Sequence record: PQ287642.1
Strand: one strand, 5' to 3'
DNA length: 64,000 nucleotides
Positions within the stretch are counted from its first letter, which is position 1. Each line of letters opens with the position of its first letter. The position numbers and the translations under genes were made by a program. Shown here piece after piece: positions 3,293 to 22,474 of this stretch. The notes under the pieces were generated by a model. The model saw only the letters and a program-made list of their open reading frames with translations, was not told the origin of the DNA and made no database searches.

Positions 3293-3874
3293 TTACTCGG
3301 AGAATTTAACGTTAAAGGCAAAGGGCGTCCAATGGAAAGTATATTCCACATCGAAAGTGCCACGGAACCCAGCACACTCCTCGTGTAGATTAGCGATGCA
3401 ATGACTCAAAGCAATCTGTTGTAGAATACTGAATTGATTAAGAGAGAACTCAAACTCTTTTTTACTAATCGTGGAAGACGGATCAAAGTCAGGATGTCCA
3501 TCAACTGTCGATTTATGTGCCAGCGTACCACGGAAAATAGCTTTATTACCAGTGGGAAGGACATCGATAAAATATTCGGTAATTACAAATCCTTTCTCTC
3601 CAACTTCCTTAAGATCCTCTAGCAGATATTGCGTGATAAGGAATAGTTGTGGCGGGAGTTCGAGTGAAGGGTGCTTACCAGTGATGGTATCAATGAGGCT
3701 AGTGATTTGACTGAAATGAAGTGAATGAACAACACCGTCATTATCAAGAATAGAGAGTTCATGCGAAATCATCGTTTCGCTCTCACCCTCAGCTTGATGT
3801 TCAAAAATAAGACCTTTTGTGATCTTATCAAATTTATCCATGGTATCTACAAACGGGTAATTAACAGCGGTCAT
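3293..3874 (-). CDS. chmB: Phage-nucleus-associated protein ChmB (gp2-like)
   Basis: 193-aa sequence recalled as PA1C gp2; position between RNR and DHFR fits phiKZ-type synteny; recall only, not searched. Confidence 0.72.
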   Translation of the reverse strand: MTAVNYPFVDTMDKFDKITKGLIFEHQAEGESETMISHELSILDNDGVVHSLHFSQITSLIDTITGKHPSLELPPQLFLITQYLLEDLKEVGEKGFVITEYFIDVLPTGNKAIFRGTLAHKSTVDGHPDFDPSSTISKKEFEFSLNQFSILQQIALSHCIANLHEECAGFRGTFDVEYTFHWTPFAFNVKFSE

Positions 3875-9370: not shown

Positions 9371-9427
9371 ACATATAGCTCTCCTTCGGGAGGGCTTTAT
9401 GTTATGTCAATTCTAAAGGTAACAATC

Positions 9428-13713: not shown

Positions 13714-13775
13714 ATGCGTCATAGTGCTCTCCCTTCGGGGAGAGCTTTATGTCAACTATTACAAAAGGAAATAAC

Positions 13776-14312
13776 ATGTCAGCATTAAGTTTGATTAAAC
13801 GTTGGTCACCCGCAGTACCTAAAATTCTATTGAGTCCACAGGACACTGTCAATGAGACTAAGATGGTCTTAGATAACGAGGGTGGAGAATATATGAAGTT
13901 TAATGACTTCTTGATCCTCCTTCAAAACGGCGTGTACCTAGAAGCCACCAAAGAGATGCATGAGACTTTGTTAGATGGTAAAGCACAGCAAAGTCTCATT
14001 GCTCGACTTAGTCGCATGGGTTATGAAGACTTTGATCAAGTAATGAAAGTCTTAGAAGAACAGCGTGATTCTGTACTTAAGAAGAAAGAATATGAAATTT
14101 GGCAAGAAGGACATCGCGCTACTGGCGAATCTAGTATAGCCAGCTTTGTAGGTAAAGCTGAAGGTTATTCTTTCTTAGATGCTGTAGACAACTACATGAA
14201 GACAGCTAGTGAGGAAGTTAAGAAATGTTTCCGTGCTGAACTAGACGCAGCTTATATTTGGGGTTGTCGTTTGTTTGACAATGAAGCCGACGCACGTAAA
14301 TCTTTCGGGTGA
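13776..14312 (+). CDS. Hypothetical protein
   Basis: AAGGA SD before ATG 13776. Confidence 0.75.
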   Translation: MSALSLIKRWSPAVPKILLSPQDTVNETKMVLDNEGGEYMKFNDFLILLQNGVYLEATKEMHETLLDGKAQQSLIARLSRMGYEDFDQVMKVLEEQRDSVLKKKEYEIWQEGHRATGESSIASFVGKAEGYSFLDAVDNYMKTASEEVKKCFRAELDAAYIWGCRLFDNEADARKSFG

Positions 14313-14488: not shown

Positions 14489-14635
14489 ATGACTGATGAC
14501 AAAAAAGAAAAACAGCATAAAGGGCGACAAGCCCTCAATGTAGTTGGTGAAATCATTGGCGCTGTGTTCGAAGCTATTTGGTGGGTCTTGACCTGCCCGT
14601 TCCGTTTAATCGGTGTACTCTGTACGCTTGATTAA
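14489..14635 (+). CDS. 48-aa membrane microprotein (not in ORF track)
   Basis: Basic N-terminus then hydrophobic IIGAVFEAIWWVLTCPFRLIGVLC. Confidence 0.65.
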   Translation: MTDDKKEKQHKGRQALNVVGEIIGAVFEAIWWVLTCPFRLIGVLCTLD

Positions 14636-14640
14636 AATAA

Positions 14641-14661
14641 TACCTAGTTGATTACAATATG
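14641..14661 (+). promoter_or_regulatory. TAC-N14-TATG promoter-like motif of ncRNA candidate 2
   Basis: TAC 14641-43 and TATG 14658-61. Confidence 0.6.
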
Positions 14662-14932
14662 TAACGAACAAAGTTACTTCATCGAAAGCTACCTGTAGAA
14701 ACATCTCACATTAGGTCCAGCAGACTGTAGTATTTCGATGTGACCATTTATAGCACCCGGAAACCAAAGGCTAATAGTGGCAAGCCGATGATTGAGGGAA
14801 GTCGAATGGGCCGCCCATACCGAAAGGTGTCTCTTCAGTTCCACTAACTGTCACCTCACGATGGACATTACGATCAAAAAGAGACTGGTTTTAATGTCCG
14901 ATATACGACTCTCCGATAAGGAGAGTTTTATG
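14661..14932 (+). ncRNA. Candidate structured ncRNA 2 (about 270 nt)
   Basis: Multiple hairpins including a GAAA tetraloop; promoter motif upstream; terminator about 14907-14932. Confidence 0.6.
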
Positions 14933-14985
14933 TCGTTTTATACTGGGCTATATAACAGTATGTCAAAGGATGTAAAGAGGTAATC

Positions 14986-15276
14986 ATGACAGCTTTCATG
15001 CCATGTCATACTGAGGCTGATATAGACCTAGCTTCAAGAAATAAAATGTTGTCAGAGCTACTTATAGAAGAATTCCCAAATACAGAAGGGATGTCAACTA
15101 AAGCAGCAGAAGACTATCTACGGTCTAAGGTCATAGATAAATTCAATATTAACCATCCCGAATATCAAGCACATGTAAGTTACGATTGTACTACACGTGG
15201 AGATTTCATTACGGCTTGGGTAACTCGAAGACTTGCCCTTGTAAAACTTGCTATAACTACAGAGGATCAATCATGA
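14986..15276 (+). CDS. Hypothetical protein
   Basis: GAGG SD; operon packing. Confidence 0.7.
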   Translation: MTAFMPCHTEADIDLASRNKMLSELLIEEFPNTEGMSTKAAEDYLRSKVIDKFNINHPEYQAHVSYDCTTRGDFITAWVTRRLALVKLAITTEDQS

Positions 15277-16544: not shown

Positions 16545-16630
16545 GGGAACATAGGCGAATTGGTATAGCCAGCTGGTTTAGGTCCAGCCGTCGTAAGACA
16601 CTGTGGGTTCGAGTCCCTCTGTTCCTACCA
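16545..16630 (+). tRNA. trnL: tRNA-Leu(UAG)
   Basis: GCTGG-TTTAGGT-CCAGC, variable arm, CCA. Confidence 0.92.
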
Positions 16631-22104: not shown

Positions 22105-22474
22105 AATAAAACCCGCTCCTCAACGGAGCGGGCTATTCGTTAGATTACCTTACCAGAAAGCTGGCCAGCTAAGGCACCGATTACGGGTCGGCACCCATCT
22201 GGTTAGGTAACGCCACTCGGGGATACCCCTCTCAACTGGAGGTAGTAACCGTCGTAACTTCAGATATAAAGACGGCCAAGTCAATATACCTGCTTCGGCT
22301 TGATCCTTTGGCATGGATCGCTGTTAGTCTCTCCGATCTTATGCGGAGAGAGCCCACTTACACCGAAAGCTAGTGGGAATAAGGTGAGGTCACTGCGGCA
22401 CCCTAATATGGCGACGGGGAGCCTTAGGGGAGATGATCCGGGTGACCTCTGTTCTGTTGGGACATTAGTCCTCG
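22105..22474 (-). ncRNA. Candidate structured ncRNA 3 (about 370 nt)
   Basis: At least 8 helices, GC-rich, no credible long ORF; TAC-N14-TATACGAG motif upstream on minus; U-tailed terminator about 22105-22135. Confidence 0.68.

What the first reader, a model, noticed from the sequence alone, without database searches (positions are those of the whole stretch)
14661..14932. About 270-nt structured RNA with a GNRA tetraloop inside the tRNA region
Seen in sequence: 5' hairpin 14661-65/14673-77, helix 14706-11/14738-43, long-range ACTTC/GAAGT and TCATCG/CGATGA pairings, ATGGG/CCCAT (14806-18), ATACC-GAAA-GGTGT, and GTCTCTT/AAGAGAC (14829-35/14879-85) enclosing CAGTT/AACTG and TGTC/GACA. Wobble pairs and the GAAA loop favour +. 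It starts at the shared motif and ends at terminator 14907-32. The overlapping 63-aa ORF-track call has a TTG start, lacks an SD and runs through the terminator. Function unknown.
Basis: partly seen in the sequence, partly recalled or inferred. Interest (0 to 1): 0.7.

Follow-up and report, generated by a model that had tools for sequence, protein, structure and literature searches.

The report
Conserved structured RNA gene in jumbo phage
Between two small genes in the tRNA region of a giant Pseudomonas phage lies a gene for a roughly 270-base non-coding RNA whose fold is kept by compensating mutations in two phage genera, belongs to no described RNA family, and has no known function.

Summary
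The window is Pseudomonas jumbo phage HHBS36_1 (Pawinskivirus, phiKZ-like). Bases 14661-14932 are non-coding. Every ORF over them is broken or unconserved in relatives. The stretch has a phiKZ-type middle promoter (AATAATACC, then TATG with G14661 as +1), also found before neighbouring tRNAs and before a validated phiKZ ncRNA. It ends at a hairpin plus U-tract (14907-14929). Rfam has no match.

A covariance model built here found a full-length homolog in phage PhiPA3 (58% identity, E about 5e-11), with the same promoter and its own terminator. With PhiPA3, 17 of 72 modelled pairs show compensatory double changes (4.4 in shuffles).

Supported: the 5' hairpin, a long hairpin (14680-14740), a two-part hairpin (14825-14856), a 3' hairpin (14863-14899) and a probable pseudoknot (14829-35 with 14879-85).

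Thermodynamic z-scores of the core are unremarkable.

The downstream genes differ between the two genera. That favours an independent RNA gene over a leader tied to one particular gene. Expression and function are untested. I rate it a new RNA family of a known general kind, of moderate interest.

The parts
14636..14644 (+). phiKZ-type middle-promoter motif AATAATACC. It reads AAAAATACT in BRkr, AAGAATACT in HPP-Temi and AAATATACT in PhiPA3.
   Evidence: It matches the middle motif 5'-AAanTTACc-3' centred about -24 (PMC4666361) and the A-rich + TACT motif about 22 nt upstream of the TSS (PMC8244752). The same motif and spacing stand before tRNA-Tyr, before tRNA-Leu(tag), and before the validated phiKZ ncRNA.
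14658..14661 (+). TATG initiator; predicted transcription start at G14661.
   Evidence: phiKZ nvRNAP starts at the G of T(-3)ATG(+1) (PMC4666361). The TATG is conserved in BRkr, HPP-Temi and PhiPA3. The phiKZ ncRNA TSS was mapped 1 nt after the equivalent G, within the stated +/-2 nt resolution. The start is inferred, not measured, for this phage.
14661..14677 (+). P1: 5' hairpin GUAAC-GAACAAA-GUUAC, starting at +1.
   Evidence: Invariant in Pawinskivirus. PhiPA3 has GUAGC-UAAUU-GCUAC, with one A-U to G-C compensatory pair.
14680..14740 (+). P2: long hairpin. The outer helix is 14680-92 with 14727-40. The inner part is variable and partly deleted in PhiPA3.
   Evidence: 13 pairs: 4 with compensatory double changes and 2 with wobble-compatible changes. 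PhiPA3 folds the same hairpin on its own.
14741..14783 (+). Central conserved block UUAUAGCACCCGGAAACCAAAGGCUAAUAGUGGCAAG. A local hairpin (P3) is predicted, but its lower stem is missing in PhiPA3.
   Evidence: This is the most conserved sequence of the family (invariant runs 14748-54 and 14759-63). Helix 5 shows no compensatory change and several breaks.
14788..14812 (+). Conserved, probably unpaired block containing the invariant GGGAAGUCG (14796-14804).
   Evidence: Invariant in all six distinct sequences. The small hairpin predicted here is not supported (helix 7).
14825..14856 (+). P8/P9 hairpin. P8 is 14825-29 with 14852-56 and P9 is 14836-40 with 14846-50. The internal loop is UCUCUU and the apical loop carries the invariant UCCACU.
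   Evidence: P8 has 4 of 7 pairs with compensatory changes (AGGUG/CACCU becomes GCGAA/UUCGC). P9 has 2 of 5 (CAGUU/AACUG becomes UUUGU/ACAAA). PhiPA3's own MFE has the same hairpin.
14829..14835 (+). 5' half of the probable pseudoknot (GUCUCUU). It pairs with AAGAGAC at 14879-85, in the loop of P10.
   Evidence: There are 7 contiguous pairs in every Pawinskivirus copy. PhiPA3 has UCUCGUU with GACGAGA, so U14834-A14880 becomes G-C. A loop shuffle alone reaches this length in 20-30% of trials, so support rests on the single covarying pair.
14863..14899 (+). P10: 3' hairpin (14863-70 with 14892-99; 14872-76 with 14886-90). The 9-nt loop AAAAGAGAC is at 14877-85.
   Evidence: Within Pawinskivirus alone, 5 of the 8 outer pairs vary and all stay paired, 2 of them by double changes. 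With PhiPA3, 5 pairs show double changes.
14907..14929 (+). Intrinsic terminator: 8-bp stem GACUCUCC/GGAGAGUU, loop GAUAA, then a U-tract.
   Evidence: Sequence. The GA-to-AG change in HPP-Temi keeps both pairs. Hairpin + TTTATG modules recur at 9379, 10333, 13729, 15499 and 20686, and in Phabio, 201phi2-1 and PhiPA3.
14929..14962 (+). Promoter-like elements for the next gene: TATG at 14929-32, then TTTTATACT-N14-TATG at 14936-62.
   Evidence: Inferred from the motif only.
14740..14983 (+). Spurious ORF calls over the RNA: 14740-14847 and 14861-14983 (HHBS36_1 CDS0020/0021), and 14792-14983 (the 63-aa ORF).
   Evidence: These are broken by 1-nt indels in HPP-Temi, and different ORFs are called in each record.

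Best explanation
Bases 14661 to about 14929 (+ strand) are a gene for a non-coding RNA of about 270 nt. It belongs to an undescribed family shared by the PA1C/PS119XW group (Pawinskivirus) and PhiPA3 (Miltoncavirus).

Shown by sequence and comparison:
- It does not code for protein.
- It evolves under constraint.
- It keeps a multi-helix fold (P1, P2, P8/P9, P10, and probably a pseudoknot between the P8/P9 internal loop and the P10 loop).
- Between the helices sit several invariant blocks that are probably unpaired: UUAUAGC, GGAAA, GGGAAGUCG, UCCACU and GAGAC.

Inferred from motifs and from the phiKZ analogy:
- It is transcribed inside the phage nucleus by the phage's own non-virion RNA polymerase, from a middle-class promoter.
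- That promoter type also drives the neighbouring tRNA genes, and transcription starts at G14661.
- The RNA is released by an intrinsic terminator.

Inferred with low certainty:
- It works as a stand-alone, stable RNA that binds a partner (protein or RNA) through its invariant unpaired blocks.
- It is not a leader dedicated to the gene behind it, because that gene differs between the two genera.
For: Non-coding:
- HPP-Temi has three single-base indels.
- The 63-aa and 35-aa ORFs are not kept, and the antisense ORFs are unrelated as proteins.

Constraint:
- The RNA differs by 5% (BRkr) and 12% (HPP-Temi).
- Fourfold-degenerate sites of the five neighbouring genes differ by 37/172 = 22% and 73/144 = 51%.

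Strand:
- One-sided changes to G-U pairs fit only the + strand.

Homolog:
- Model R1 scores PhiPA3 L023:12300-12528(-) at 34.2 bits, E about 5e-11, over the full model length. blastn had missed it.
- The PhiPA3 copy has the same promoter (AAAATATACTGG-N11-TATG) and its own, unrelated terminator.

Structure:
- 17 of 72 pairs have compensatory double changes. Shuffles give a mean of 4.4 (0 of 500 reach 17), and slid controls give 0-3.
- 95.9% of cells are paired.
- PhiPA3's own MFE gives P1, P2, P8/9 and P10 at the same places.
- The pseudoknot keeps 7 pairs through a U-A to G-C change.

Promoter:
- The motif and its spacing are identical to those before the phiKZ PHIKZ298/297 ncRNA. That ncRNA was detected by Grad-seq, northern blot and ONT-cappable-seq.
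- TATG with G as +1 and the middle motif AAanTTACc come from PMC4666361.

Independence from the downstream gene:
- The 96/119-aa gene behind it here is unrelated to PhiPA3 gp367, a phiKZ gp297 homolog.
Against: - No transcript data exist for any phage that carries it.
- Folding energy of the core is not better than shuffles (z = -1.35, -0.31 and -0.72).
- Only four independent lineages are available. The alignment that includes PhiPA3 was fitted to the model's structure, which inflates pair counts.
- The central third (14741-14824) has no supported structure.
- Local divergence in these mosaic genomes varies a lot. The adjacent 51-aa gene has only 3/16 fourfold differences to HPP-Temi, so the constraint argument is weaker for that comparison.
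- In both genera a gene follows the terminator within 30-55 nt in the same orientation. A cis-acting role therefore cannot be excluded.
Confidence: 0.6

Rival explanations
1. It is a cis-acting leader: a riboswitch-like or protein-controlled conditional terminator. The folded domain would decide whether transcription stops at 14907-14929 or reads through into the next gene. The short RNA would then be a by-product, or have a double use.
For: - In phiKZ, 42 terminators lie in 5' UTRs. 34 of them give either a predominant short RNA of <250 nt or a read-through mRNA from the same start (PMC10914365). 201phi2-1 shows the same pattern.
- Here and in PhiPA3 a structured domain is followed at once by a terminator, and then by a gene 30-55 nt downstream on the same strand.
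- One aptamer in front of different genes is typical of riboswitches.
- The internal loop CUCUUC (14831-36) can pair either with the P10 loop or with the 3' half of the terminator, GGAGAG at 14920-25. That could make a switch.
Against: - A TATG, and a second middle-type promoter, stand between the terminator and the next gene. That gene therefore does not need read-through.
- No alternative pairing with the terminator is supported by covariation. The GGGAAGUCG/CGACUCUCC pairing is weakened in HPP-Temi, where the terminator itself is kept. The PhiPA3 terminator has an unrelated sequence.
- The family is confined to two phage genera, which is unusual for a metabolite sensor.
Confidence: 0.25
2. 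It is a non-functional relic or a DNA-level element, for instance a decayed gene or a protein-binding or recombination site. Its apparent conservation would then come from recent exchange between mosaic genomes.
For: - Divergence is very uneven along the region. The 615-aa gene has 4% fourfold differences to HPP-Temi and the 51-aa gene 19%.
- Folding z-scores are weak.
- A distant relative (Logan contig L014) has an unrelated sequence at the same site, and L015 has nothing there.
Against: - The PhiPA3 copy is only 58% identical, yet it keeps five helices through 17 compensatory pairs.
- It also keeps the promoter and a terminator.
- G-U pairs argue for RNA rather than DNA hairpins.
Confidence: 0.06
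3. It encodes one or more small proteins: the annotated 35-aa, 40-aa or 63-aa ORFs on the + strand, or the 51-aa ORF on the - strand.
For: ORFs are called here in HHBS36_1, HPP-Temi and PhiPA3 (gp368).
Against: - Each record calls different ORFs.
- Starts are TTG or GTG without a Shine-Dalgarno sequence.
- 1-nt indels shift every frame in HPP-Temi.
- Substitutions in the best-kept antisense ORF are mostly non-synonymous.
- The window and PhiPA3 antisense ORFs share only FPGAI, which comes from the conserved RNA block.
Confidence: 0.03
4. It is a diverged member of a known RNA class: group I intron, RNase P RNA, tmRNA, a tRNA array remnant, a CRISPR-repeat mimic, or a T-box.
For: - It lies in the tRNA region.
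- GAGGGAAGUCG recalls the RNase P CR-I sequence GAGGAAAGUCC (from memory).
- AGACUG/AGAGACU recall the group I R element (from memory).
- There is an 11-nt identity with the anticodon arm of tRNA-Leu(tag).
Against: - No Rfam family matches even at E <= 10.
- ARAGORN finds nothing.
- There are no flanking exon halves, and it has its own promoter and terminator.
- The P4-like partner overlaps the terminator and is not kept in HPP-Temi.
- The 11-mer is at chance level and lacks the complementary 5' stem.
- There is no type I-F repeat match.
Confidence: 0.03

Closest known systems
phiKZ ncRNA between PHIKZ298 and PHIKZ297 ('3'UTR_PHIKZ298', 270595-270485; Gerovac 2021 PMC8545117, Putzeys 2024 PMC10914365)
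   Same: - It has the same promoter architecture and spacing (AATTATACTGG-N11-TATG against AATAATACC-N13-TATG).
- It has a hairpin right at the 5' end and an intrinsic terminator.
- It lies in the tRNA-bearing region.
- It sits directly upstream of gp297, exactly where the PhiPA3 member of the present family sits.
- It is abundant and was confirmed by northern blot.
   Different: - It is about 111 nt with two stem-loops, against about 270 nt with at least five helices.
- Models R1 and R2 give no match to it.
- Only a short UCCACUAAAC resemblance is seen.
- Homology is therefore not shown.
Short RNAs made by premature termination in 5' UTRs of phiKZ and 201phi2-1 (ONT-cappable-seq; PMC10914365, PMC11512511)
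   Same: The layout is the same: phage promoter, short structured RNA, terminator, then a gene. Sequence is conserved within a genus. Function is unknown.
   Different: Those are mostly <250 nt with simple hairpins. Their conservation was shown by sequence or position only. Here the fold is kept across two genera by compensatory changes, while the downstream gene differs.
T4 stable RNAs C and D in the tRNA gene cluster (own knowledge, not tested here)
   Same: They are non-tRNA stable RNAs of unknown function, encoded among phage tRNA genes and co-expressed with them.
   Different: They are 120-140 nt, are processed from tRNA precursor transcripts, and come from a different phage family. No comparison was run.
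GOLLD and ROOL large structured RNAs near tRNA genes in phages and prophages (own knowledge; both are in Rfam)
   Same: They are complex-folded non-coding RNAs of unknown function, often next to phage tRNA genes.
   Different: They are 2-3 times larger and occur in other hosts. No Rfam match was found here.
Transcriptional riboswitches with a terminator as expression platform
   Same: They have a conserved pseudoknotted domain directly followed by an intrinsic terminator and a gene, and the same domain can stand in front of different genes.
   Different: No ligand is known, no conserved anti-terminator was found, promoter motifs lie downstream of the terminator, and the distribution is very narrow.

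Membership tests
phiKZ-type middle-class transcription unit (non-virion RNAP) | Motif AAanTTACc (A-rich + TACT/C) centred 21-24 nt upstream of the start | tested here: met
   AATAATACC lies at 14636-44, with its centre 21 nt before G14661. The spacing is identical in the phiKZ ncRNA promoter and in PhiPA3.
phiKZ-type middle-class transcription unit (non-virion RNAP) | TATG with transcription starting at its G | tested here: met
   TATG lies at 14658-61 and is conserved in all relatives. That the start is used in vivo is not testable here.
phiKZ-type middle-class transcription unit (non-virion RNAP) | A transcript detected with middle timing | not testable with these tools
   No transcriptome of a Pawinskivirus or of PhiPA3 was found in the library.
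Intrinsic (Rho-independent) terminator | G+C-rich hairpin followed by a U run | tested here: met
   The stem at 14907-14927 has 8 bp (4 of them G-C), followed by UUUU. The pairs are kept in HPP-Temi. The scan did not list it.
Any Rfam 15 family | Covariance-model score at or near the gathering threshold | tested here: not met
   There are no hits in 14661-14932 at the gathering threshold or at E <= 10.
Group I intron | Interrupts a gene or tRNA, with exon halves on both sides | tested here: not met
   The upstream ORF ends with a stop at 14635. The RNA has its own promoter and terminator. There are no tRNA halves.
Group I intron | Conserved core (P3-P8, P7 G-binding site), recognised by RF00028 | tested here: not met
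   No RF00028 match at E <= 10.
tRNA / tmRNA | Cloverleaf or tRNA-like domain | tested here: not met
   ARAGORN and Rfam find none here.
Protein-coding gene | An ORF kept open, with mostly synonymous change in relatives | tested here: not met
   HPP-Temi has frameshifting indels, and no ORF is shared with PhiPA3.
Structured non-coding RNA (general) | Base pairs maintained by compensatory substitutions | tested here: met
   17 of 72 pairs, against 4.4 in shuffles and 0-3 in slid controls. Within-genus support exists for P10 alone.
Structured non-coding RNA (general) | Folding energy below that of shuffled sequence | tested here: not met
   The core gives z = -1.35, -0.31 and -0.72.
Riboswitch / attenuator | Conserved mutually exclusive pairing between the sensing domain and the terminator | tested here: inconclusive
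   Candidate pairings exist in the window, but none is supported by covariation, and the PhiPA3 terminator is unrelated.
RNA anti-CRISPR (solitary repeat mimic) | Close similarity to a host CRISPR repeat | tested here: not met
Other repeat types were not tested.

The most novel reading that the evidence does not exclude
The RNA is a new class of compact, pseudoknotted functional RNA specific to nucleus-forming jumbo phages. It could be a sensor that sets terminator read-through inside the phage nucleus. Alternatively it could be a decoy or scaffold that binds a host or phage factor, for example in counter-defence. It would then be carried as a self-contained 'RNA moron' cassette (promoter, RNA, terminator) that moves between genomic contexts. 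The different neighbours in PhiPA3, and the unrelated structured RNA at the same site in contig L014, fit such cassette turnover.
Probability: 0.15. Interest if true: 0.8.

Novelty: new member of a known kind. Interest (0 to 1): 0.45.

Why it matters
phiKZ-like jumbo phages are candidates for therapy against Pseudomonas aeruginosa, and they are models for the phage nucleus. Their RNA biology is almost unexplored. Published ncRNA candidates in these phages rest on transcript mapping, and little is known about their structure.

Here the evidence runs the other way: an RNA fold kept by selection across two genera, but no expression data yet. If the RNA is expressed, it is a well-defined object for asking three things:
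- what non-tRNA RNAs do in phage tRNA regions;
- whether RNAs made in the phage nucleus act there or in the cytoplasm;
- whether such cassettes are exchanged like accessory genes.

It also corrects annotation. At least five 'hypothetical protein' calls in three GenBank records lie on this RNA.

Tried and rejected
**Searches for a known family**
- Rfam at gathering score and at E <= 10: nothing.

**Searches for more homologs**
- blastn against 50,697 phage genomes, with the window copy and with the PhiPA3 copy: only the 8 Pawinskivirus records, or PhiPA3 itself.
- IMG/VR, JGI metagenome and GTDB genome pattern scans with invariant blocks and with a three-anchor family signature: only PhiPA3 itself or chance hits. 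One 21-mer match lies inside an alpha/beta-hydrolase gene.
- Synteny route: the 187-aa neighbour has no relatives in IMG/VR. The 96-aa neighbour has only two distant Logan relatives. One of these (L014) has an unrelated structured RNA at the site, and the other (L015) has none.
- Models R1 and R2 on the phiKZ tRNA region, Phabio, 201phi2-1, L014 and L015: no match.

**Functional ideas tested and dropped**
- RNase P-like P4 or anti-terminator pairing GGGAAGUCG/CGACUCUCC: not kept in HPP-Temi.
- tRNA-Leu anticodon-arm mimic: an 11-mer at chance level.
- Long antisense matches to the rest of the window: none beyond chance.
- Type I-F CRISPR repeat mimic: none.

**Functional ideas judged by eye only**
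- Anti-Shine-Dalgarno mimic UCACCUC: lost in HPP-Temi.
- RsmA-type GGA loops and CrcZ-type A-rich motifs: not convincing.

**Technical notes**
- A dinucleotide-shuffle script of my own timed out. The tool's shuffles were used instead.
- I did not type long dot-bracket strings into the count of structure pairs. The pseudoknot and the proposed UAGUGG/CCACUA contact were therefore checked only by script or by eye.
Full report
**Where we are.** The window is identical to Pseudomonas phage HHBS36_1 (PQ287642), with the same coordinates. This is a 302-kb jumbo phage of the PA1C/PS119XW group (genus Pawinskivirus). Its relatives are phiKZ-like, nucleus-forming phages: Phabio, 201phi2-1, Noxifer and PhiPA3. 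The finding lies in the tRNA region, which holds seven tRNAs between 10.4 and 18.6 kb. It sits between a 51-aa ORF (14489-14635) and a 96-aa ORF (14986-15276). Four of the seven annotated GenBank records leave 14636-14985 empty. HHBS36_1 and HPP-Temi place different small ORFs on it.

**The observation.** Several of them overlap each other by two bases. Folding energy gives weak support.
- The full 272 nt scores z = -2.45 on the + strand and -0.61 on the - strand.
- Much of that signal comes from the terminator.
- The core 14661-14900 scores only z = -1.35. The HPP-Temi copy scores -0.31 and the PhiPA3 copy -0.72.

So what is 'seen in sequence' does not exceed chance on its own. Relatives have to decide.

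**Not coding, and constrained.** Alignment of the seven Pawinskivirus copies gives three effective lineages: the window group, BRkr at 95% and HPP-Temi at 88%.
- HPP-Temi has three single-base indels inside the element.
- The 63-aa ORF is split there. The 35-aa ORF is frameshifted after two codons. The antisense ORF keeps only its first 32 codons, with mostly non-synonymous changes.
- The element differs from BRkr and HPP-Temi by 5% and 12%. Fourfold-degenerate sites pooled over the five neighbouring genes differ by 22% and 51%.
- One caveat applies. These genomes are mosaics. The adjacent 51-aa gene is also little diverged from HPP-Temi (3 of 16 sites), so this argument is strongest for BRkr.

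**Transcription signals.** Just upstream lies AATAATACC (14636-44), followed 13 nt later by TATG (14658-61).
- Yakunina et al. showed that the phiKZ non-virion RNA polymerase starts at the G of T(-3)ATG(+1). They also showed that middle promoters carry AAanTTACc centred near -24 (PMC4666361).
- Wicke et al. describe the same middle motif as an A-rich stretch plus TACT about 22 nt upstream of the start (PMC8244752).
- The same arrangement precedes tRNA-Tyr (13584) and tRNA-Leu(tag) (16494), and occurs again at 14940 before the next gene.
- It also precedes, with identical spacing, the phiKZ ncRNA between PHIKZ298 and PHIKZ297. That RNA was found by Grad-seq, confirmed by northern blot, and given a TSS by ONT-cappable-seq one base after the equivalent G.

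The 3' end is a hairpin (14907-27) with a U run, immediately followed by another TATG. This 'hairpin + TTTATG' module recurs five more times between 9.3 and 20.7 kb, and also in Phabio, 201phi2-1 and PhiPA3. Promoter use and termination are inferred. No transcriptome exists for these phages.

**Structure within the genus.** RNAalifold and pair counting on the Pawinskivirus copies single out one helix, 14863-70 with 14892-99. Five of its eight pairs vary and all stay paired. Two do so by double changes and three through G-U pairs, which work only on the + strand.

Other reader pairings fare badly within the genus:
- The 'GNRA hairpin' ATACC-GAAA-GGTGT loses one pair in BRkr and three of five in HPP-Temi.
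- ATGGG/CCCAT loses two to three pairs.
- TCATCG/CGATGA loses two of six in HPP-Temi.

**Looking for more distant copies.** The following searches gave nothing real:
- blastn against the phage collection;
- exact-pattern scans of IMG/VR, the JGI metagenomes and GTDB genomes;
- the synteny route through neighbouring proteins.

Two Logan contigs carry a 58-60% identical homolog of the 96-aa gene, in conserved gene order.
- L014 has, at exactly this site, a different structured RNA of about 245 nt (z = -3.5), with the same kind of promoter and terminator. It shows no similarity to the window RNA by local alignment or by covariance model.
- L015 has no spacer at all.

**The PhiPA3 homolog.** I followed an unrelated lead, a second non-coding unit at 22.1-22.5 kb whose blastn hits included PhiPA3. 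I then scanned the PhiPA3 tRNA region with model R1 with the speed filters off.
- It gave one full-length match at L023:12300-12528 on the - strand (HQ630627, about 301.3-301.5 kb): 34.2 bits, E about 5e-11.
- The match lies between gp369 and gp367, under a + strand 'gp368' that is probably a false call.
- It is preceded by AAAATATACTGG-N11-TATG and begins at that G.
- It is followed by an unrelated hairpin + TTTATG terminator.
- Identity to the window copy is 58% over aligned columns.

The helices compare as follows:

| Element | Window | PhiPA3 |
|---|---|---|
| P1 | GUAAC/GUUAC | GUAGC/GCUAC |
| P2 | CAUCGAAA/UUUCGAUG | UAUCGAGG/ACUUGAUA |
| P8 | AGGUG/CACCU | GCGAA/UUCGC |
| P9 | CAGUU/AACUG | UUUGU/ACAAA |
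| P10 | see coordinates above | remade as GGAAGG/CUUUCC around a loop that keeps GAGAC |
| Pseudoknot | GUCUCUU/AAGAGAC | UCUCGUU/GACGAGA |

In PhiPA3 the pair U14834-A14880 has become G-C.

Counted on the model-guided alignment, 17 of 72 pairs show double changes. Shuffles give a mean of 4.4 (0 of 500 reach 17), and versions with the partner slid by 1-3 columns give 0-3. That alignment leans towards the model. However, PhiPA3 folded on its own gives P1, P2, P8/9 and P10 in the same places.

Parts with no support:
- the inner part of P2;
- the lower stem of the predicted P3;
- the small hairpin at 14796-14816.

Between the helices lie blocks that are invariant in all copies: UUAUAGC, GGAAA, GGGAAGUCG, UCCACU, GAGAC and AGACUG. 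UAGUGG (14775-80) and the P9 loop CCACUA (14841-46) are complementary, and both are conserved. This is a possible tertiary contact that I could not test.

**What it is.** It is a real, selected, multi-helix non-coding RNA of a family absent from Rfam. So far it is known from Pawinskivirus and PhiPA3 only. Model R2, which includes PhiPA3, finds nothing in the phiKZ tRNA region, the Phabio and 201phi2-1 loci, L014 or L015. A family-signature scan of IMG/VR returns only PhiPA3 and chance hits.

**How it probably works.** The RNA has its own promoter, of the class that drives the phage tRNAs, and its own terminator. The gene behind it is a 96/119-aa protein here, and an unrelated gp297 homolog in PhiPA3. 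At this site, relatives carry another RNA or none. I read this as an independent RNA gene, a promoter-RNA-terminator cassette, whose product acts through its invariant unpaired blocks on some partner. This last step is inference.

The main rival is the pattern documented in phiKZ and 201phi2-1. There, short RNAs arise by conditional termination in 5' UTRs. The layout here is the same, and one sensing domain before different genes is what riboswitches do. Two points count against it: promoter motifs lie between the terminator and the next gene, and no conserved anti-terminator pairing was found. I put the stand-alone reading at roughly twice the leader reading. Relic DNA, small proteins and disguised known RNA classes are each unlikely, for the reasons given in their entries.

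**Verdict.** The element is a new family within a known kind, the phage-encoded promoter-to-terminator ncRNAs of phiKZ-like phages. It is notable for a fold conserved across genera. Interest is moderate. It becomes high only if the RNA proves to be a sensor, decoy or catalytic RNA.

Noticed in passing
window 22105-22472, minus strand (promoter-like AAAAGAATACT-N13-TATACG at about 22500-22470; terminator hairpin at about 22133-22105): A second unannotated non-coding unit of about 365 nt, and far more strongly structured: MFE -141 kcal/mol, z = -5.7, 0 of 100 shuffles. There is no Rfam match. It is 92-100% conserved in all Pawinskivirus records and is present over its whole length in PhiPA3 (intergenic, gp354/gp355). 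RNAalifold gives 110 pairs, 15 of them with compensatory double changes. It deserves its own analysis.
   Followed up: partly
L014:2832-3078 (Logan contig SRR14611563_105653): A distant relative with the same gene order has, at the syntenic site, an unrelated structured RNA of about 245 nt (z = -3.5). It has a TACT...TATG promoter and a hairpin-TTTATG terminator. A second relative (L015) has no spacer there. This suggests turnover of RNA cassettes at a fixed site.
   Followed up: partly
L012:14122-14392 (Phabio) and L013:10964-11180 (201phi2-1): These are unannotated gaps of about 270 and 220 nt in the tRNA regions of two other genera. They resemble each other (local alignment z = 3.9, 0 of 300 shuffles) but not the window RNA. 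The Phabio one lies just upstream of tRNA-Leu. They may be another ncRNA family.
   Followed up: partly
window 9379, 10333, 13729, 14907, 15499, 20686 (+ strand): A repeated module: a G+C-rich hairpin immediately followed by (T)TTATGT. This reads as an intrinsic terminator fused to a TATG initiator for the next transcript. It is also seen in Phabio, 201phi2-1 and PhiPA3.
   Followed up: partly
window 13749-13776: The 187-aa ORF is annotated from ATG 13749. That ATG is part of such a TATG module and has no ribosome-binding site. BRkr and phiHQ start the gene at the second ATG (13776), which follows AAAGGA.
   Followed up: no
L019:8486-8596, minus strand (phiKZ 270485-270595): The validated phiKZ ncRNA has the same promoter spacing as the window RNA, a 9-bp hairpin at its 5' end and the string UCCACUAAAC. 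It sits upstream of gp297, like the PhiPA3 member of the family. No homology is detectable with R1 or R2, and Rfam gives only noise.
   Followed up: partly
L023:12296-12517 (PhiPA3 gp368); window 14740-14847 and 14861-14983 (HHBS36_1 CDS0020/0021); L003:3197-3367 and 3400-3498 (HPP-Temi CDS0021/0022): These 'hypothetical protein' annotations lie on the RNA, on either strand. They are not conserved and are probably false gene calls.
   Followed up: yes
window 16545-16630: ARAGORN and Rfam call this tRNA-Leu(tag) (48.9 bits), while the PS119XW record flags it as a pseudo-tRNA. It shares an 11-nt string (UUAGGUCCAGC) with the RNA at 14711-21, which is at chance level.
   Followed up: partly
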